A stretch of 64,000 bases of DNA from Styela clava. Its lineage: Eukaryota. Shown here in pieces: positions 2,149-12,100 of the stretch. The translations under genes were made by a program, and so were the position numbers. Where the stretch lies: the NCBI RefSeq assembly GCF_964204865.1, contig NC_135251.1, forward strand, positions 15,500,001-15,564,000, written 5' to 3'. Each line of letters starts with the position of its first letter. The first letter of the stretch is position 1. Under the pieces are notes generated by a model. It was not told where the DNA came from. It made no database searches and saw nothing but the letters and a program-made list of their open reading frames with translations.

Positions 2149-3639
2149 ATGTCAGTTTCCTTTGGATTCAAGAAGAAAATAGAATCCAAGGTTGTGAATG
2201 TTGAAAAGCCTAAAAATGAAGAGCCGGATTATCTTGAAACCGTAGAAGGAAAAGTAATAAAATCAACTAAACTTCAGAAAGAACCACCAAGGGATTTGGT
2301 TATACCCCTAATTAAACAAAATGTTTATAAAATACCAACATCTGTGAATAAACAAAAGACATCAGCAGAAAATGTTATCAGTAGTATTGATGCGGAAGCA
2401 GCTAAAGAAATTCTTGCAGAATCTAAAACATTTTTAGAAGATACTGATCAAAACGGAGAAGATTTTGAAAATCTTGCAGTGCCACTTCTTATGAAAAATA
2501 AGGTGCCCGAGGGATATGAAACTGATAATAAACTAGATGTATCATTGCGACCTGATGAAGCATCAGAGGCCCAATATGATCAAATCCCTGTGGCTGCATT
2601 TGGCATGGCAGTACTGCGTGGGATGGGTTGGAAACCTGAAGTGGGAATTGGCCGAACTTTCAAACAAAACACAGAAATGTTGCACCAGCAAGTTAGGCCT
2701 AAAGGTTTAGGTCTTGGTGCTGATGTGGCTACCCCAATAAAAGCTGATACAACTAAGACTACAAATCGAGATGAAACTCATATAGAGGAAAATCAATTAG
2801 CACTTGAAAAAGGTGCTAACGTATTCATTCACAGGGGCGCATTGAGAAACAAATATGGTGTCATTTTGGGCCTAGACATTGAGACTGCAAGATGTATTGT
2901 CAAAATGGCAATAGGGGGTAAATCTGAACAAATTGGACAACACTGTCTTAGAGTTGTTACAAAAAAGGAATATGATAAAAATGCGAAGGATTTAAGTAGA
3001 CTTAGCAAAGCATATACTGGGGATAACATGCTTATAATAGGTAATGGAAAAAATACAGAGGAAAATGATAAAAGACGAGAATCACCAGGTTCTGACAGAG
3101 CTATGTCACACCAAAAAGATACAGATATGAAGCATAAAGAAAAAAGGAAAAGAAGACACAAAGAATATTCACCACCAAAACATAAAAAATCAAAGAAACA
3201 TAAGTCAAATAGAGAGATTTCTCCAAAACAAGACTCAAATTCTACTCTCTCGCATTGGGTACAACCTCAAATGAGAGTCAGAATTGTTGATAAATCGTAC
3301 AAAAAAGGCAGATACTATCTTGAAAAAGTAATTATTGAAGATGTTTTAGGTGGTGGACTTTGTTGCTGCAAAACGACAGATGGTAGATTGTTGGATGATA
3401 TTGAAGAATCAATGTTAGAAACAGTTATTCCAAAATCAGCTTCCGATTCTTATATAATTATAGTGAAATCAAAATTCAAATCGAAACATTCAGGGAAACT
3501 TGCTAAAATTCTAGAAAAAGATAAAGCAAATTGTGAAGCTCTGGTTCAGTTAATTGAAGATAGAGATGTTGTGGTTCGGGTTGCTTTTGAAGAAATGTGC
3601 GAGTATACTGGCGATGTTGAAGCCAGTATGATGTTTTAA
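2149..3639 (+). CDS. GPKOW: G-patch domain and KOW motifs-containing protein (Spp2/MOS2 homolog), single-exon CDS, 496 aa
   Basis: G-patch 'FGMAVLRGMGWKPEVGIG..RPKGLGLGA', N-terminal 'SFGF', 'LVIPLI', C-terminal KOW region 'WVQPQMRVRIVDKSYKKGRYY..LETVIPK'; acceptor ttttAG at 2137 just before the ATG. Confidence 0.92.
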   Translation: MSVSFGFKKKIESKVVNVEKPKNEEPDYLETVEGKVIKSTKLQKEPPRDLVIPLIKQNVYKIPTSVNKQKTSAENVISSIDAEAAKEILAESKTFLEDTDQNGEDFENLAVPLLMKNKVPEGYETDNKLDVSLRPDEASEAQYDQIPVAAFGMAVLRGMGWKPEVGIGRTFKQNTEMLHQQVRPKGLGLGADVATPIKADTTKTTNRDETHIEENQLALEKGANVFIHRGALRNKYGVILGLDIETARCIVKMAIGGKSEQIGQHCLRVVTKKEYDKNAKDLSRLSKAYTGDNMLIIGNGKNTEENDKRRESPGSDRAMSHQKDTDMKHKEKRKRRHKEYSPPKHKKSKKHKSNREISPKQDSNSTLSHWVQPQMRVRIVDKSYKKGRYYLEKVIIEDVLGGGLCCCKTTDGRLLDDIEESMLETVIPKSASDSYIIIVKSKFKSKHSGKLAKILEKDKANCEALVQLIEDRDVVVRVAFEEMCEYTGDVEASMMF

Positions 3640-4370
3640 TTTTGCCCAAAATAAAAAGCATTAATTATATTTTGCCGTTAGGTTGATGGTAAGATGTTAC
3701 AGCGTTTTCAATATATTTTGGATGCCTTTATTGGAATTCGAAAACCTTATCATTTAGATATGTGTTTTATAAATTTAGATACGATTTGTAATTTTGTTCA
3801 TTTTCTATAACCTGATGCCTTTGGATAAAAAACAATCTTATATCAACAAGTTTATCATAATATGATTTTGATATAAACTACTACTCTGCTAACTGATTTG
3901 ATTTCTAAATTTATGCTTCGATAATTATCAATTAATCTCCTAAAACATGGTAAAATAAATTGACTAAATACTGTTCACACACAGAAATTTTATATCAGTC
4001 ATCCAAGTATTGCCAATGTTGAACGAACGGTTTTCGATTCCTAATTTGACAAAAAATAGACAATACGAGTATTCTGCAAGTGATAATATCTCTTTATTGT
4101 TGCTTCTAACAATTGCAGATGATGAATTGTATTAAAATGGAATTTCTATCGCACTTTTATATTTATGTTTTGTAATGATGTCTTTTCAGTAATAGGGTAG
4201 TAATAATTTTTAGCTTTTATAAGCATTCCATCATTAAATTGATTGGATATACCTTCATCAATAACACAAATGATAGTGAAGTACTAACCAACCCTGCACT
4301 GCAGTGACTCAATATTTGCCTGAACCACACTGTGAATAGCTCAATATCTAGGTACAAACAGACGAAAAAA

Positions 4371-7300
4371 ATGTCGTATCCACATCCGACTAATAATTAC
4401 TACCCCCCTCCACCTCCAAACATATCAATGGATCCACTTCCTCCAGGTATGTCCTTAATTTTCTATTAATGTTGACCATAAATTTCCTGGTCCTGAGCTT
4501 TGATAATGTTTTGAATCAGGATGGGAAATGAGGATTGACGAGGCAACAGGATGGCCCTTTTTCATTGATCATAGAAACCAAACAACTACATGGCAGGATC
4601 CAAGGCCTCCAAAACACCAAAGCTCTTATCCGCATCAGGTGGGTATTTCATGTAATTAGATTGATCATAAAATTTTTCTTGATACTCAGTCTCAGTTTTG
4701 TTAAAATTAGAAAATTCAATGCTTTGATAAACATTCATTTTTTTAGAAATTGATATAGTTTATGTAAACTTTTTCACTTCCAGACTGGAAATTATTACTT
4801 GTGTCTTCCTTTATTAAATAAATTTTGGCTTCAGGGTTTCATTCTATGTCATATGCATACATTCAGTAATGATGTTTATTGAAAATAATTGCATGGCTGA
4901 ATCTTGAAACCAAGTAGATATGAATAACACAATTAACAGAGCACTTTGAGCGAATGACCAGTTAATTTGGAGTCAATGTTAGTGTGGAATTGGAACATGA
5001 CATATTCATACTCATTTTCAACTTGCATTCTCATTCTCTGTGTCAGAGTAAACCCTAGAGCCAGAAAATTAGATTGTAAATTTTCTCCGAGCTCGGCGGT
5101 GTGGCGCATCGAACTAAGCATTGGAAATACGCTCGTCACCGCATCTCTGATTATCCTGCACTCGTTTGAATTCGATGAGACACAATTATAAGCGAGAGAC
5201 TCCTCGGTGCCATAGAATGGTTCACATAAGCGCTGGTCGGTAACGGCTTCCTCTACCATCAAGCCTTGCATCTGAAACAAATAACTGTCTAACTGATGCC
5301 ATACGAAACATGGACTTGTAATTGACGGTTGGCCGTGGTTTTTTATATGATTAAATCGTCTTTTATTAAAGATTTTTTCCTCCCCAGGATAAATATGTAA
5401 GTCCTAACATAATAATCATAGTACTTTTATTAGAGTAGTTGATGGCAACTGATGTAAAATGTAACATAAGATTGTGAGGATAAAATTTCAGAGATGCATA
5501 ATCTTTACAATCTAATCTTATTTCAATGACTAAGTCAATTAACACTATGATTTTTTACTATTGATATGTGTTAGTGTTATCTAAGCTTATAGTAATTGGC
5601 GTTATTGTTAGGGAGGAAAGAAACTTTTTCATTCAATAAACATATGAATATCTAATTCTATTTTCACTGATGTATAATATTAAGATAATTTGTATATTGG
5701 GAGCTTGCAAAAAATTCTTGCGTTGCGAGTGTGGTTACTGCAGCTGTCGCTTTACCTTCTAGAATAAGAGACGATGATAAGAATAAGCTCGAGTAATGAA
5801 TTCCGATATTCCGCCGCACGGTATTTAATAGGTATGCATTTTATCATTCATTTTCTCGCTTAGTAACGGAGCTCCGTTTCTCTGGAAGGTACATCATTAA
5901 AAACAGTTGGCATGTGCGACTTCGTCACGCAATGATATCGTATTCCGAGTGAAAATAACGCTTGCGTTATAGTTTTGTTATTAACGTGTGAGCTCGATTA
6001 GTCCATGACTATATCCATCGTTGTCTCGTGTCGCGTTGCTTTCTAGAATTCTCTCGATTTATTTTCTCTCGTCTGATTTGCGAAACCTCTAGTACTGTCT
6101 CGAATTGACAGCGTCATAGACTCGATTGTTTGCGCGAAATTACAGGAGATTTCTGGAATAGCCCAAGCCTGGTTTATATCTCGTGGGAGATGACTGCCGA
6201 CTATTTTATTATTTGAATCCTTCGCTAGCGTAGTTTAAATTTATTCGAGACAGATGCTCGCCTTTCCCAGATACTTTGACATGTTTGAAATGAAACGGCC
6301 TCAATTTATTAATCGCTATTTTGAAGACGAGGACGAAAGCCCTTTTACGGTAAATATACCTATTTATGTATATGAGTTTTTATTAACCTATTTCGTCTTT
6401 ATCGGTATCGGCGAGGGTTAAAACAGTAGGTTCCATTTTCTAAGAATTTTTATTAAATTCCTTCTTAAGTGCAGTATTACAATTTAGAATTAATTTTATC
6501 GTTATCAGAACAATCAACTGCCTCAACAAAATAAGCAACCCAAACGCATACAAGTACCTGTTCAACATGAGCCAACTGCACAGCAATATCAGCGTCAGTT
6601 TCAGCAGATGCCTATACCACAACCGAGTGGTGTTTCTCATAGTCAACAACACAGAGATACAACAGCGCCTGTGAACAACGAAATGCACCGGTCTGCTGAA
6701 ATGGTAAGAAATCTTACTGAAATTCCAGTTCGACATGTCCCTTTAAAGGAACACGGTGAATATGTTTCGCCACCTAGTTATTTGCAAAGTAATGTGGATA
6801 TTGAGAAAATGCCAAAAGAAATGGCAGTATTAGATACTCCAATCGAAAATAAAGTGGCTGATGAGTGCAACTCAAAAACGGATGTCTTGGAATCACCACA
6901 GGAAACTGAATCACAGAATTTGGCAGAAACATCAAAGCGCCCAGTGGTTCGGAAACAAACATCTTTAATTGTGTCTGACGATCACACCACCCCAATACCG
7001 ATGCCATATGATTCTCTTGATGACAGTATACCTGAGGAGATAGAAGATGCTAAGGATAAAAGTCCTCAACCTAAAATGAAGACCCCCACCATTCGAAAAC
7101 AAACATCTCTCAGAGTATCGGATGATCACACAACACCAATCCCAATGTCGTATGTGCAACCATCATGCTTGGAATCACAGATTGAGGAGGAGCAGAATGA
7201 ATGCGAAGGAAATCAAAAATTGGAAATGAAACAAGATTCGCCTTTGATTGATAAGTCTTCAAATTTGATGGAAGACACAGACCCGAATACATGTGAAAAG

Positions 7301-8324
7301 TCTGAGAAGGTTGTTATTAGCCGTTCAATGTCACATGATGAGGAAATGGCAAAGCACAAGGAAAGAGTTGCACCCGCACCACGAAGAGTAATACCAATAA
7401 AAGTTGCTAACACATCAACAGCTCAAGCGAGTAAAGTCCCCTTGTCATCAAATCAGGTACTGGAGGAGAGTGTGATGCATCTTGGTTTGAGCAAGCTGGC
7501 CAATCATCATTCTTCAGAGCAAGCTGGCAATCACGGCGCATTTTCATCACATGCAAATTTCATTAAATATCAAACAAATCCATTTGCCTTATACTGCTTT
7601 GATGTAGCTTCCATGCATGCAGAGTGCTTTTACTAAATATTAATCATCTCTATTTTTGTTTCAGGCAAGAGAAGTGCCTATAAATGTGCAACAGGGTACA
7701 GCCAGGCCAGTTCAGAGGCAACCAAGAATGCAAAATCATGTAACTCAACCACAGGTGAGTAATAATTTTAAAATTATTTACAATATTATTTTTGTATAGT
7801 TATCTAAAAAGTAAATATCTTTTGCTAAATTTGAATGCTCATGTAATCGAAAATAATTTATTTATAAAACAGCAATATATTTTTAATTTCAGCATCCCAG
7901 CCCAGAACCAACCATGTCGACTCCTGTTCAAGCTGGAATGCCAATGCCCCAACCACAACCTACAGCTCAAGCAGCACAGCCGAGCACTTCTTATACTGAG
8001 CAGGGTGACACATACACTCAACCTAAGCCACCTGCGCCAAAACCCAAAGAACAGTGGGTTGATCCGAGAATTACTGCTGCTCTGGAATCTATACAAAAAA
8101 TAGCTGATGAAGCAAGGACTGTTGGTACACAAGTCGACGTAATTGAAGTGACATCGAAGGATAAGAAATATCTAACTTTAGAAGAGCAATTGACAAAACT
8201 TTTATTGAAGTTGGACTGTATTGAATCTTTTGGAGATGAAAATGTGCGGTCAAAGCGAAAAGCATGTATAAAACAAGTTCAACAAACGCTTGATGCTCTT
8301 GAACTTAAGTTAATTGCTAGCTGA
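4371..8324 (+). CDS. BAG3: BAG family co-chaperone BAG3-like (WW + IPV-like motifs + BAG domain); exons 4371-4446, 4520-4638, 6509-7456, 7665-7754, 7893-8324
   Basis: Exons 1-2 encode the WW domain [34 protein letters not shown]; the last exon encodes a BAG domain '[47 protein letters not shown]'; all junctions are GT-AG and phase-compatible. Confidence 0.9.
5088..5408 (+). mobile_element. tRNA-derived SINE family A, near full-length, in BAG3 intron 2
   Basis: A-box-like TGGCGCATCG head, degraded B box, body similar to 16232-16525, tail 'ggataaatatgtaagtccta'. Confidence 0.75.
6041..6180 (+). promoter_or_regulatory. Heat-shock element array plus TATA-like box (candidate internal BAG3 promoter)
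   Basis: Alternating nGAAn/nTTCn units: TTC-ta-GAA-tt-CTC-tc-GAT (6041-6058), GAA-ac-CTC-ta-GTA-ct-GTC-tc-GAA (6082-6104), GAA-at-TAC-ag-GAG-at-TTC-tg-GAA (6136-6158); TTTATA at 6173-6178. Confidence 0.6.
6254..6349 (+). CDS. BAG3: Putative alternative first coding exon of BAG3 ([32 protein letters not shown])
   Basis: ATG at 6254, 32 open codons, phase-0 donor ACG|gtaaat compatible with the phase-0 acceptor at 6509; lies just downstream of the HSE/TATA array. Confidence 0.55.
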
Positions 8325-9186
8325 AATTGATAGTACTTTATTGTGTCATATTTAAATTTGCATGTTCAGTAGCCTTCATGTGATCTCTGTTTTTCACATA
8401 GTTCATAATATTGAATGGGAAGGGTTAACCTAGTTTCAGGACTCTGACCTGAGGTACTATGTTACCAACCTTCTGTATCCGTCATACATCTTGCTCTGTC
8501 TGGGATCTAACTTCTTGATCTATTGTGTAACAGAACACCTTGAACTAGTGCTGGATTTCATGAATTTTTTCAGTTTCTTTATATATCTTATCTCGCTATC
8601 TGTATTTTCGCAATATTTTCACGAAGAACTTTCTCATACACCAAGAATAATAAATTTCATCATTCAAATTCATGCTTTTTGTTGCACTTTTTATGAAATT
8701 TTTCGTGTTATATTTGCTTGTTATAATAAACAAACACGTTTCAAGTGATCTCCATTTTGTCTTTATTGACATCTGAAAAGACTTGCGAGAACCATAATAT
8801 GGCAGGGCTGCGCGTATTTTTCAGTTATAATAAATAAATAGGAATGAATCTACTATTTCGAATGGATTGTAAGCTGAAATAATTTATCATATTTACGGGT
8901 AGCTGAAATTTCAGGTTACACGGCACACACTGAGCGTGCGTGTTTCGGCTTTGTGGTGAACTGTTTCGCCTTATGACGATTTGCACTATTAAGTTTTTTC
9001 ACCTTTTTTCAGAATTGAACTGGTCTTTCTATTAATAGTCTTTTATTTAAATGCAGAATTAAATGAAAATGATGAACAACATATCTATATTTTACATTTT
9101 AACATACTGACGACCGCGCGCCTGTACGCCAGCCGCGTACGTCCGCAAATCGGATGGATAAGTCGTTGTATTAAGTATATAAATAT

Positions 9187-12100
9187 TTATTTTTCGAATA
9201 ATCCCATCCGTGCGTTAAAGCTTGGTACTGATATTGGGGTTACCAAGTTCTGGTCATCTGCATCGTTCTTTAGCTTCCAAGCCTTTGATCGGAGTTTATT
9301 TCGAGATTTCTTCGATTTCGTGTCACATTTATCAGCGTCACTGTTTTCAGTTTTCGAATATTTGATTGCAATATCCAATTCCATCCGCGCTGGAAGTATG
9401 GATGTGACATTAATTTCATAACATACCGTTTTCACTGGCAGGCGCCAAGCGACTTTGTCGGATCACTACTAGTTTAAAAACATAGCATATAGATACTTTT
9501 CATTAAACCGTTTTGGTAGTTAGTCGAATTTCAGTTTTGTCTTGTTTCTTTTAGCAATATGAAAATAGGAACAGCTTTAATATATAAGTCTGTTAACTAG
9601 AGCCATGACGAGAAAAACTTCCACCAACCCGTATTATAACAGGTTACCATGCAAAGAAGGTTGCGCGTTTAAAAATTTATCGTCCGCCTTCCAGTGTAAG
9701 AAATTTAGGCTACGTTCCTGCTCTAGTAGGGCAAAGGCAACATATGGCGGGTGTGTGGGGAGTAGGAATTGTTGATACCATATATCAGGGGTGGCCAACC
9801 TGCCTTCGACCGCGATCGACTAAAATCTTTAAAATAGCTCGCGATCGACTGATCGGTAATAGGGTCCTGCACAAAGACGAATGGGTAATGAATACACAGA
9901 TAACTGCACACAAGCATAAAAAATTCCACCACTGCCAATAAACAGGCTTTTTGGGCGGATTCTTGATAAAATCGACACAAATTTTTTATTTTTTTGTTCC
10001 ATTTAAGTTGTTGATTTGATTATTTAATTGAACCCGGAGTAAATGTTTCATCATTTATTTAAGATTTTTTTAAATCATACAATTCAGATTTTTAGCCGTA
10101 CGTGTTGAAAATTCTTTAAGAAACCTTGCCAAGTATTCATGTATAATCTAAACAGCAAAAAAATAAATATTCTCAAACCATGAATGTTACATGACTTCTC
10201 AGACAGTATCTAATTTACAATTACCAATTCTTCGCTCGCTTGGAACTAGAAAAAATTGCGCATTGTGATGCCCCTGCTACCATTGCGACTGAAATTGATC
10301 TCACTACTTTTGGAGGGAGACAATAACTTTCGCATACTGCAGTAATTATTGTAGGATCGTTTGTCAGTCAAGACACGCGATATTCGGCACTTCATTTTTA
10401 AACCTCGGCAGCGGCAAAACTTGCATTTGTTAGGACGTTAGGTAACAATATGCGCTATTGAGCTTGCCCAGAATCAAATACTACTGTATGTGTATATTGT
10501 ATTTTTCGCATGTACAGTACTGTATTCTTCCTGTTTTAAAACACACAACTGGTTCAAGGCGATTTTTTTGGGGTCTTTCATTAATTCACTCAACATCAGT
10601 CGACCGGTCGATCGACGTGTTGGCCATGTTGGCCGACGTGTTGGCCATGTATGAATCACCATAAATATGTAAATCCTATCCTATGTCCCTTTTGATCGGG
10701 TTCAACCTTCTACAAAAGTTGTGAGACAATTAAGGACAGTTTTAATTTACCATTAGCTATAGATCATCATCTTTGTTTATAAAGTTTCTTAATATACGAG
10801 AATAGTAATCATTACCTCTTGCTAGATCTCCTTGCGCTTTATCGGGTTCTGAATTTTTTTCTATAATATTCGGTTTCTCCTGTCCCAATTGGTCATTACA
10901 AAGCTTCATATCACCGCCTACGTCGCTTTTCGAACCACGTATTTTAAATCCTCGCTTTTTCTTACTTTTATATCTGATGAAGGTATTCGAACTTGACGTC
11001 TCTGTTAATGAAATTTGACCTAATAAAATTTGAACAATACCAATCAATCCAAGTAAAATTAATAAATGAATAATTCAATCGAAATAAGGTGCTTGGAATT
11101 TCTCTTGATAAGTTTGATACCCGACATCGGGTTTTTGAAATTTTATTTCGAAAGTCCTATGCAATAGCCAAGTAACCAAAAGACATAATGAACTTAGGTC
11201 CTAGTGTTGTTACGTCATGCCTACTAGCACATAGGTTCTCAAAATGCTCCATACGGAGCCCCATAGCTCCGCAAGAAAAAACCAGGAGCTCCACGAGAGA
11301 AAACTAGGGGCTCCGCGAGCTATTCGTTTACTTATTGAAATATTGAATATTTTTAAATACAAGAGATCCGGGTCATTAAATAAAGTAATTTTAGTTTACT
11401 CAAGAACATTATTCGGTGAATAAACATTTTTTTGTTAGTTGTTTTTATAAATTTATTATGGAACTCCGTAAATAATAGTCAATCTCCTAACGGGCTCCAC
11501 AACCCGAATAGTTTGAGGACCCCTGTACTAGCACACTCTTGGGGTTGGGAATGTGTCAATTCGAGTAATTTTCAAATATATTCGTTTATTACTACGATTT
11601 CGTGGATTTGAAACTCTCATTTATGACGGCATAATACTTTTTACGAATACACTATGGCGTCACAATGAATATTCATTTATAGTGTTTTAAATAAAAAAAT
11701 CTGTTTTTTCCAATATTCACGCAATCAATTTCGTTTATATAAACATGTGAGCATGGAAAATCATAAACCTGTAGTTATTTCTTTTTTAATTGTAAGTTCG
11801 ATTTCGCTCCTGTATCTTTCCACCTTTTCTCGCAAGCTATCCACCATTGCTTGTTGGTTAGCGCAAAATGCTTTGGCTCGGAATAGACCTGACGGGCATC
11901 TGTGCATTCGATTGCCACACATGGTATCGTGATCAGAGTCATCATAATTTGCCATTCCTGGCATTGGCTGCGTTTTCTTGGCAATTGCAACTGATATGCC
12001 AGGGGCTACTGGCGGGGCGTATGGGCAGATGGTGCTCCAATAATCTGAATATGAAACATAAATACAATTGCATAATGCATACGTGTTGATGTGTCAACTG

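What the first reader, a model, noticed from the sequence alone, without database searches (positions are those of the whole stretch)
6041..6509. Hidden heat-shock promoter and alternative first exon in BAG3 intron 2 predict a WW-less stress isoform
Seen: three phased, degenerate nGAAn/nTTCn arrays (6041-6058, 6082-6104, 6136-6158), a TATA-like box 15 bp after the last, then a 32-codon ATG exon (6254-6349) whose donor joins in frame to exon 3. The peptide is too short for the ORF track. It is rich in F/D/R ([15 protein letters not shown]), loosely like small-HSP N-termini (impression only). Established: HSF binds such arrays; BAG3 is HSF1-inducible and its WW domain links it to PPxY partners in CASA autophagy and Hippo signalling. 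Inference: a promoter switch produces an sHSP/Hsp70 adaptor uncoupled from WW-dependent functions under stress.
Basis: partly seen in the sequence, partly recalled or inferred. Interest (0 to 1): 0.75.

Follow-up and report, generated by a model that had tools for sequence, protein, structure and literature searches.

The report
Heat-shock-type promoter inside sea-squirt BAG3
Inside the sea squirt's BAG3 chaperone-helper gene lies a second, heat-shock-style start site whose transcripts are real and already in the public annotation, giving shorter proteins without the WW docking domain; whether heat actually switches it on is still untested.

Summary
The window is Styela clava (a tunicate). The gene is its single-copy BAG3 orthologue: the WW domain is in exon 2 and the BAG domain in the last exon.

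- **HSE arrays:** the three arrays at 6041-6158 are the three longest of 14 such arrays in the 64 kb. This density was reached in 0 of 200 whole-window shuffles, 0 of 2000 local shuffles, and 0 of 20 real 10-kb flanking samples.
- **Promoter layout:** the order proximal HSE, TATA, ATG matches small-HSP promoters of the same genome.
- **Exon 6254-6349:** it is spliced to 6509 in 4 of 4 RNA-type runs from 4 studies.
- **Not hidden:** RefSeq already lists the WW-less isoforms, XP_039258793.1 (521 aa) and XP_077976499.1 (270 aa).
an internal donor at 6703 removes 251 codons, including the I-P-V motif. This short form has the deeper contigs in the three runs where it was found.

Not shown: heat induction, the transcription start, and conservation. 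The peptide has no detectable relative, and the small-HSP resemblance failed.

Verdict: a real alternative promoter and first exon, probably HSF-driven (about 0.65). It is a new variant of a known kind and of moderate interest.

The parts
4372..4447 (+). Canonical exon 1 (ATG at 4372), bypassed by the alternative start
   Evidence: Sequence. Joint 4447>4520 in 3 of 4 runs. P0006/X1 554 aa.
4520..4638 (+). Canonical exon 2, encoding the WW domain; absent from the alternative isoforms
   Evidence: Pfam WW PF00397, E 6.4e-9. PDB hits are class-I WW domains. Joint 4638>6509 in 3 of 4 runs.
5551..6600 (.). Patch where CpG is not depleted (o/e 1.3-1.84), inside a CpG-poor gene body (0.2-0.7)
   Evidence: 400-bp windows at 5701-6200 rank 2nd and 4th in the 64 kb.
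6041..6058 (.). HSE-like array 1: 4 units, 10/12. A T>A variant at 6058, seen in 3 runs, makes it 11/12
   Evidence: variant, table 3.
6082..6104 (.). HSE-like array 2: 5 units, 12/15 (the weakest)
6131..6158 (.). HSE-like array 3, proximal: 6 units, 15/18.
6173..6179 (+). TATA-like box TTTATAT, 14 nt after array 3 and 79 nt (from TATAT at 6175) before the ATG
   Evidence: Same layout in small-HSP promoters L010, L011 and L016.
6200..6253 (+). Inferred 5' untranslated part of the alternative first exon. The start is not mapped
   Evidence: Inference from the TATA position. No ATG in 6193-6253, and an out-of-frame ATG at 6190 lies just upstream. RNA contigs run through 6254 without a joint.
6254..6349 (+). 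Coding part of the alternative first exon: 32 codons, donor GTAAAT
   Evidence: Identical to residues 1-32 of P0001 and P0004. Joint to 6509 in 4 of 4 runs.
6509..6703 (+). Exon 3a (65 codons, holds the V-P-V motif at 6548-6568), ending at the internal donor GTAAGA
   Evidence: joint 6703>7665 in 3 runs. P0004 and P0007.
6704..7456 (+). Exon 3b (251 codons): I-P-V motif at 6722-6736, two 20-residue repeats at 6950-7009 and 7094-7153, and V-I-P-I-K-V at 7388-7405. Kept only in the long forms
   Evidence: P0001. Contigs 6675-7439/7665.
7665..7754 (+). Exon 4 (30 codons)
7893..8324 (+). Last exon, with the BAG domain and the stop codon
   Evidence: Pfam BAG PF02179, E 4.6e-16. Best PDB match is the BAG3 BAG domain 1uk5, E 2.2e-11. 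Joint 7754>7893 in 3 runs.

Best explanation
Intron 2 of the single-copy Styela clava BAG3 orthologue holds a second promoter of its own.

Layout: a 118-bp cluster of three heat-shock-element arrays, then a TATA-like box 14-16 nt after the last array, then a first exon whose ATG lies about 79 nt further on.

Transcripts from this promoter splice 6349>6509 and bypass exons 1-2. The proteins therefore lack the WW domain and begin with a 32-residue lineage-specific peptide. They come in a long form (521 aa) and, through an internal donor at 6703, a short form (270 aa). The short form keeps one V-P-V motif and the BAG domain.

Shown: the exon, its splicing, the isoforms, the non-random HSE cluster, and the match to small-HSP promoters of the same genome.

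Inferred: transcription starts near 6200-6210, HSF binds the arrays, and stress raises this promoter's share of BAG3 output. The canonical promoter carries no such array and would supply the WW-bearing form.

My odds: about 0.97 that the exon and isoforms are real, about 0.85 that there is an internal promoter, and about 0.65 that it is HSF-responsive.
For: - Identity of the exon: residues 1-32 of RefSeq isoforms P0001 (521 aa) and P0004 (270 aa) equal the exon, followed by exon 3.
- RNA: the joint 6349>6509 with GT..AG ends is in 4 of 4 runs from 4 studies. No joint enters 6200-6254 from upstream in any of the 4.
- Motif density: 3 of the window's 14 arrays, and its three longest, lie in 118 bp. 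At least 15 units per 150 bp occurred in 0 of 200 whole-window and 0 of 2000 local shuffles. None of 20 real 10-kb samples has two arrays within 350 bp.
- Same-genome controls: small-HSP promoters L010, L011 and L016 carry 3 arrays in 100-320 bp, including degenerate 6-unit arrays. Their proximal array is followed after 13 nt by TATATA, and in L011/L016 the ATG comes 85 nt later. Here the figures are 14-16 nt and 79 nt.
- Canonical promoter: no array lies between 371 and 6040.
- CpG is not depleted across 5551-6600, although the gene body is CpG-poor.
- The region 5550-6508 is single-copy, so it is not a repeat.
- Contig depths of the alternative versus canonical junction are 2239.7 vs 111.3 in X1, 131.9 vs 284.8 in X2 and 13.1 vs 26 in X6. 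This suggests separate control, but the tool warns that contig depth is a poor measure.
- Literature: HSF1 regulates mammalian bag3 (PMC3122056, passages read). Ciona bag3 rises together with hsp70 and dnaJb4 (PMC10294541, abstract and passages read).
Against: - No heat-versus-control comparison could be made. The runs are coded, held as contigs only, and their conditions are unknown.
- The transcription start cannot be read from contigs.
- The reference allele has no run of three perfect units, unlike the HSP70 pair, which has perfect triplets. Array 2 is weak.
- The isoform is present in all 4 runs, so the promoter is not silent without a known stress.
- The 32-residue peptide has no relative at E up to 0.001 among 1.84 billion representatives. 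Orthologous loci could not be fetched, so conservation of the exon and the arrays is unknown.
- A cluster this dense in one 64-kb window could still occur by chance a few times across a 377-Mb genome.
- Tunicates trans-splice leaders (my recollection). A 5' end there need not mark a promoter.
Confidence: 0.65

Rival explanations
1. The internal promoter and first exon are real, but the promoter is constitutive, tissue-specific or developmental. The GAA/TTC arrays are not used by HSF.
For: - The junction is seen in all 4 runs, with no known stress.
- The arrays are degenerate, with no perfect triplet in the reference allele.
- If study P1 is a developmental series, which is unknown, stage could explain the very high alternative share in X1.
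Against: - The density of arrays is unmatched in 264 kb of real sequence and in the shuffles.
- The spacing to the TATA box copies this genome's small-HSP promoters.
- BAG3 is an HSF1 target elsewhere (PMC3122056).
Confidence: 0.2
2. There is no internal promoter. The alternative 5' end arises from pre-mRNA started at the canonical promoter, for example by spliced-leader trans-splicing onto an acceptor just before 6254 (or at 6270/6271), or by other processing.
For: - Tunicates use spliced-leader trans-splicing (recalled; my paper search found nothing holding all four terms).
- AG dinucleotides with some pyrimidines precede 6254 and 6271.
- Contigs cover the whole intron at low depth, for example X2 4609-6267.
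- Contigs cannot show starts.
Against: - It would leave the HSE-TATA-ATG layout and the CpG patch as coincidence.
- None of the loose ends listed lies at 6254 or 6271, although 34 loose ends were not shown.
- The alternative-to-canonical junction depth ratio differs about 40-fold between runs (rough).
Confidence: 0.08
3. The exon is only a 5' leader. Translation starts further down (for example the ATG at 6608), so the 32-residue peptide is not made, or is irrelevant. The product is simply an N-terminally truncated BAG3.
For: - The ATG at 6254 has a weak context (C at -3, C at +4).
- The peptide has no detectable relative and no Pfam family.
Against: - All three ATGs of the exon are in the exon-3 frame, with none out of frame. 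The inferred leader 6193-6253 has no ATG.
- The only variant seen inside the exon (6268 C>A) is synonymous by my reading of the codon.
- RefSeq models start at 6254.
Confidence: 0.07

Closest known systems
RefSeq models of this very gene: XP_039258793.1 (isoform X2, 521 aa) and XP_077976499.1 (LOC120335364 isoform X2, 270 aa)
   Same: Both start with exactly the 32 residues of 6254-6349 and continue into exon 3.
   Different: These are automatic models, one of them misnamed 'flocculation protein FLO11-like'. They say nothing about the promoter, the HSE arrays or stress. No paper in the library names them.
Mammalian BAG3, induced through HSF1 acting on the gene's promoter
   Same: The same protein family (WW, I-P-V-type motifs, BAG domain), and HSE-type control of a stress co-chaperone (PMC3122056, passages read).
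   Different: In mammals, HSF1 is described as acting on the bag3 gene promoter and inducing BAG3; no separate isoform-specific promoter is mentioned (PMC3122056, passages read). Here the arrays sit in intron 2 and the canonical upstream region has none, so induction would yield WW-less proteins. A 40-kDa mammalian short form exists, but its origin is stated to be unknown (PMC3122056).
Small-HSP and HSP70 promoters of the same genome (L010, L011/L016, L001/L002)
   Same: - Clusters of 2-3 arrays within 100-350 bp, some with degenerate units.
- In small-HSP genes, a proximal array, then 13 nt, then TATATA, then 85 nt to the ATG.
   Different: - The HSP70 pair and L010 contain perfect three-unit elements. 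The BAG3 cluster has none in the reference allele, but more units (15 in 118 bp).
- In HSP70 promoters the array-to-TATA distance is about 60 nt.
Ciona bag3, co-upregulated with hsp70 and dnaJb4 in a stress response
   Same: A tunicate BAG3 that behaves as a stress gene (PMC10294541, abstract and passages read).
   Different: That paper does not address isoforms ('isoform' occurs 0 times). I could not compare the loci.

Membership tests
BAG3 orthologue | C-terminal BAG domain closest to BAG3 | tested here: met
   Pfam PF02179, E 4.6e-16. Best PDB match is BAG3 1uk5, E 2.2e-11, ahead of BAG4 and BAG5.
BAG3 orthologue | N-terminal WW domain | tested here: met
   Exon 2: Pfam PF00397, E 6.4e-9. 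This holds for the canonical isoform only; the alternative isoforms lack it by construction.
BAG3 orthologue | I-P-V-type motifs that bind small HSPs | tested here: inconclusive
   Motif search only: V-P-V at 6548-6568, I-P-V at 6722-6736 and I-P-I at 7388-7405. They are conserved in P0002, P0003 and P0005 by eye. Binding was not tested.
HSF-driven heat-shock promoter | At least three contiguous alternating nGAAn/nTTCn units | tested here: met
   Arrays of 4, 5 and 6 units. Every unit matches at least 2 of 3 letters and keeps the key G/C. There is no run of three perfect units in the reference allele.
HSF-driven heat-shock promoter | Arrays lie just upstream of a core promoter and transcription start | tested here: inconclusive
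   A TATA-like box lies 14-16 nt downstream, as in small-HSP genes of this genome. The start cannot be read from contigs.
HSF-driven heat-shock promoter | Transcription rises on heat or proteotoxic stress | not testable with these tools
   Only contigs of coded runs were available. The depth ratios differ between runs, but the conditions are unknown.
HSF-driven heat-shock promoter | HSF occupancy | not testable with these tools
   No ChIP data are within reach.
Alternative first exon / alternative promoter | Spliced to the common downstream exon in RNA | tested here: met
   Joint 6349>6509, GT..AG, in 4 of 4 runs from 4 studies.
Alternative first exon / alternative promoter | No upstream exon spliced into it | tested here: met
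   None of the 4 runs shows a joint ending in 6200-6254, and an in-frame TAA lies at 6236. Contigs drop rare forms, so this is not proof of absence.
   No Pfam family at E up to 1. tblastn against 8 small-HSP loci of the same genome gave a best E of 1.5. Only a four-residue R-x-F-D-x-F pattern is shared with the L010 N-terminus.

The most novel reading that the evidence does not exclude
In this basal chordate, BAG3 is split between two promoters.

- An array-free upstream promoter makes the WW-bearing scaffold.
- A dedicated intronic heat-shock promoter makes a 'mini-BAG3'. It has no WW domain and, after the 6703 splice, no central I-P-V region. It would act as a plain stress-induced Hsp70 nucleotide-exchange factor rather than as an autophagy or Hippo adaptor.

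Its lineage-specific N-terminal peptide, with an R-x-F-D-x-F pattern, might give it a docking function of its own.
Probability: 0.3. Interest if true: 0.6.

Novelty: new variant of a known kind. Interest (0 to 1): 0.38.

Why it matters
BAG3 links Hsp70, small HSPs and, through its WW domain, autophagy and Hippo partners. In mammals, stress is reported to induce BAG3 through HSF1 acting on the gene's promoter.

If a tunicate routes its heat-shock control through an intronic promoter that leaves out the WW domain (and mostly the central region), that would be a natural separation-of-function allele set. It would show which BAG3 activities are needed acutely under stress and which constitutively. 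It would also show that promoter choice, not only protein level, can tune a chaperone hub.

On the practical side, it corrects an uninformative RefSeq name. It also gives a compact, testable stress-responsive promoter for ascidian transgenesis.

Tried and rejected
- **Insect origin.** I first took the AT-rich, short-intron gene for an insect starvin/Samui gene.
- **Small-HSP-like peptide.** No Pfam hit and nothing above noise against 8 small-HSP loci of the same genome. Rejected as a family claim.
- **Paralogue, or a repeat-borne promoter.** Exon 3, the 32-residue exon and the DNA 5550-6508 each match only themselves in the genome.
- **Structured RNA.** Rfam found nothing in 3600-9000 at E up to 0.1.
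- **Conservation.** The exon-3 search gave three relatives with 39-50% identity, all of them starting inside exon 3. The search with P0001 added none. The 32-residue peptide against 1.84 billion representatives found only P0004 itself. A relative with about 60% identity over 32 residues would fall below that search's threshold, so this is weak evidence of absence.
- **Transcription start from contig depth.** I tried to reason from the depths of the X1 and X2 contigs ending at 6306 and 6267. I gave it up: both a start near 6200 and other readings fit.
- **Literature.**
  - No paper names the gene or its accessions.
  - None links Styela, the BAG family and heat.
  - None describes a WW-less BAG3 from an alternative or intronic promoter (I saw the listings and abstract starts only).
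  - The S. clava genome paper has 0 occurrences of BAG or HSF.
  - Supplementary tables of PMC7540406 and PMC10294541 were not opened, and they could hold expression values for this gene.
- **Earlier notes of this scan.** Nothing near the place. The two notes returned by words were unrelated.
Full report
**What the locus is.** The window is AT-rich (GC 0.37). It lies at 15,500,001-15,564,000 of a 31,344,463-base contig of the assembly.

Between 4372 and 8324 on the + strand lies a five-exon gene, read:
- exon 1, 4372-4447
- exon 2, 4520-4638
- exon 3, 6509-7456
- exon 4, 7665-7754
- exon 5, 7893-8324

Exon 2 encodes a WW domain (Pfam E 6.4e-9). Exon 5 encodes a BAG domain (E 4.6e-16). The BAG domain's best solved relative is the BAG3 BAG domain (1uk5, E 2.2e-11), ahead of BAG4 and BAG5. 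The WW domain resembles class-I WW domains.

An exon-3 query found RefSeq and UniRef proteins of Styela clava at 99% identity. Exact look-up gave these models:
- XP_039258792.1: 'BAG family molecular chaperone regulator 3-like isoform X1', 554 aa
- XP_039258793.1: isoform X2, 521 aa, misnamed FLO11-like
- XP_077976496.1: isoform X1, 303 aa (later annotation round)
- XP_077976499.1: isoform X2, 270 aa (later annotation round)

So the organism is a tunicate, and 'BAG3 intron 2' is the right description. The gene is single-copy in its genome.

I scanned with a fixed rule: at least 3 contiguous 5-bp-phased units, each matching GAA or TTC in at least 2 of 3 letters, each keeping the key G or C, and at least 2 units perfect. 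The 64 kb holds 14 such arrays.
- 6041: 4 units, 10/12
- 6082: 5 units, 12/15
- 6131/6136-6158: 6 units, 15/18

The five-unit 13/15 array at 6136 is the only one of its kind in the window.

The total number of arrays is what chance gives: the shuffle mean is 13.3, and 200 kb of real flanking sequence has 13.1 per 64 kb. The clustering is not what chance gives:
- At least 15 units within 150 bp: 0 of 200 whole-window dinucleotide shuffles (maximum 11).
- At least 3 arrays within 150 bp: 1 of 200.
- Local shuffles of 5800-6400: 0 of 2000 had 3 arrays.
- Real sequence: none of 20 10-kb samples from the same chromosome has even two arrays within 350 bp.

This shows non-randomness at the scale of the window and its neighbourhood. 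Across 377 Mb a few such clusters could still arise by chance.

**Positive controls from the same genome.**

A divergent pair of intronless HSP70 genes (L001/L002) has perfect three-unit elements at -193 and -212 from the ATG, with TATAAA about 60 nt downstream of them. It also has an 11/12 four-unit array.

Small-HSP loci carry clusters much like the one here:
- L010: three arrays in about 110 bp.
- L011 and its near-duplicate L016: three arrays in about 300-330 bp, including a degenerate six-unit 16/18 array.

In these small-HSP promoters the proximal array is followed after 13 nt by TATATA. In L011 and L016 the ATG I read from the printed sequence lies 85 nt after the TATA start.

In BAG3 intron 2 the proximal array ends at 6158. 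TTTATAT starts at 6173 and TATAT at 6175. The ATG is at 6254, which is 79 nt after 6175.

Caveats on these controls:
- L011 and L016 count as one independent example, and L010/L015 as another.
- Of the 13 heat-shock-family loci scanned, 6 had at most one array. The two arrays of L004 lie inside its reading frame. The motif is therefore neither universal nor exclusive.

**Further sequence support for a promoter.**
- CpG observed/expected is 1.3-1.84 across 5551-6600. In the gene body on either side it is 0.2-0.7. That is the pattern expected of a germline-unmethylated island inside a methylated gene body. This interpretation comes from my own knowledge of tunicate methylation and was not tested.
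- The canonical upstream region has no array: none lies between 371 and 6040.
- The stretch 5550-6508 is unique in the genome, so it is not part of a repeat. A repeat does sit further upstream in the intron, at about 5091-5412, with at least 40 scored copies at 71-77% identity.
- The inferred leader 6193-6253 has no ATG. The only nearby upstream ATG (6190) lies before the expected start. All three ATGs of the exon are in the exon-3 frame. A TAA at 6236 closes the frame upstream.

**RNA evidence.** One run search listed 11 runs guessed to be RNA and 4 further runs of unrecorded kind ('?'). Those four hold 0.90-1.00 of the sampled words, and I take them to be DNA.

I laid contigs of four runs from four studies on 3900-8900. 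GT..AG joints at the gene's introns show that the runs contain spliced RNA.

| Joint | Runs | Contig depths |
|---|---|---|
| 6349>6509 (printed as 6348>6508, cut +1, skips 159) | 4 of 4 | X1 2239.7, X2 131.9, X6 13.1, X10 2.9 |
| 4638>6509 (canonical) | 3 of 4 | X1 111.3, X2 284.8, X6 26 |

No run shows a joint entering the alternative exon from upstream. Contigs run straight through 6254 (X1 5799-6306, X6 5885-6306, X2 4609-6267).

The alternative exon thus behaves as a first exon. Its share of the traffic into exon 3 looks very different between samples: roughly 95% in X1 and about a third in X2 and X6. The tool warns that contig depth is a poor measure, and the sample conditions are coded. 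I take this only as a hint of separate regulation.

Contigs cannot show where transcripts begin. I tried to infer the start from depth steps and abandoned the attempt.

One variant, 6058 T>A, is present in X1, X2 and X6. It turns the last unit of array 1 into a perfect GAA (11/12). The other variant inside the arrays (6090) falls in a spacer. These are too few to test for constraint.

Exon 3 has an internal donor at 6703 (GAAATG|GTAAGA, phase 0) that joins exon 4 at 7665.
- The joint appears in X1 (depth 1685.7) and X6 (115.7). In X2 it is printed as 6705>7667 (304.8).
- The contigs covering the long part of exon 3 have depths of 428.9, 11.9 and 48.2 respectively.
- It matches the 270-aa and 303-aa RefSeq models.
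- It removes 251 codons. These hold the only true I-P-V motif (6722-6736), two 20-residue repeats (6950-7009 and 7094-7153) that are conserved in the three relatives P0002, P0003 and P0005, and a V-I-P-I-K-V stretch.

The short WW-less product keeps only a V-P-V motif (6548-6568) and the BAG domain. Whether the alternative promoter and the 6703 donor are coupled cannot be told from short contigs.

**Tests of the rest of the interpretation.**
- The small-HSP-like flavour of the peptide did not survive. There was no Pfam family at E up to 1 and no alignment better than E 1.5 against eight small-HSP loci of the same genome.
- What remains is a four-residue R-x-F-D-x-F pattern shared with the N-terminus read from L010. 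It recalls a conserved N-terminal motif of vertebrate small HSPs that I remember but did not test.
- The peptide has no relative at E up to 0.001 among 1.84 billion representatives other than the gene's own product, and no second copy in the genome.
Conservation of the exon and the arrays is therefore open, not refuted.

**Comparison with what is known.**
- HSF1 control of bag3 is textbook for mammals (PMC3122056, passages read). The same review mentions a 40-kDa short form of unknown origin.
- In Ciona, bag3 is co-upregulated with hsp70 and dnaJb4 in a stress response (PMC10294541, abstract and passages read). That paper does not deal with isoforms.
- I found no paper naming this gene or its accessions, none on Styela and the BAG family under heat, and none describing a WW-less BAG3 from an alternative or intronic promoter (listings only).
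- The S. clava genome paper reports that dispersed Hsp70 genes rise at 32 degrees C but never mentions BAG or HSF. Its supplements, which I could not open, may hold expression values.

**Verdict.** The isoform itself is already known as an automatic annotation. What is new is the reading of its upstream region as a heat-shock-type promoter, and the consequence that stress induction would yield WW-less, mostly central-region-less BAG3.

I rate the exon and isoforms as certain for practical purposes. I put an internal promoter at about 0.85 and HSF responsiveness at about 0.65.

I did not build or search a joined spliced model of my own. The database's own isoforms were used by id.

Noticed in passing
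window 6703/6704 to 7665: An internal donor in exon 3 skips 251 codons, including the I-P-V motif, two 20-residue repeats and V-I-P-I-K-V. Its junction contigs are deeper than the long-exon contigs in X1, X2 and X6. It corresponds to the 270-aa and 303-aa RefSeq models.
   Followed up: partly
window 6950-7009 and 7094-7153: Two near-identical 20-residue repeats (R-K-Q-T-S-L ... T-P-I-P-M-x-Y) are the best-conserved part of exon 3 in the relatives P0002, P0003 and P0005. Their function is unknown. They may be a phospho/14-3-3-type site plus an I-x-I-type motif, which is my guess.
   Followed up: no
window about 5091-5412 (intron 2): A roughly 320-bp interspersed repeat with at least 40 scored copies at 71-77% identity (2183 first-look candidates). 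RNA contigs pile up here with many loose ends and non-canonical joints, as expected of a repeat expressed elsewhere.
   Followed up: partly
window 2149-3639 and 3640-4371: The upstream neighbour on the same strand is an intronless GPKOW-type gene (G-patch, KOW and GPKOW_C domains). RNA contigs holding BAG3 exons 1-2 extend upstream past 3900 (X2 record of 3024 letters). The canonical leader is therefore long, or continuous with the neighbour's 3' end.
   Followed up: no
window 6058: A T>A variant in all three S. clava-labelled runs laid turns the fourth unit of HSE array 1 into a perfect GAA. The reference allele carries the weaker form.
   Followed up: partly
L001/L002 (G000:C17:10527367-10535285); L011 and L016 (G000:C8:19198855-19210514); L010/L015 (G000:C8:10312373-10315896): A divergent HSP70 gene pair shares a 1.29-kb promoter region with perfect HSEs. 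Small-HSP genes have HSE clusters 13 nt upstream of TATATA. These are useful reference heat-shock promoters for this genome.
   Followed up: partly
run X10 on window 6290-6348 + 6508-6666: A run labelled as a different organism (B) holds the spliced alternative-exon junction, with 3 differences in 59 letters of the exon and none in 159 letters of exon 3. It could be a close relative, a mislabel or contamination; I did not resolve which.
   Followed up: no
window 8551-9450: Another stretch where CpG is not depleted (o/e 1.25-1.78) begins about 230 bp after the BAG3 stop codon (8322-8324). It looks like unmethylated intergenic DNA or the next gene's promoter.
   Followed up: no
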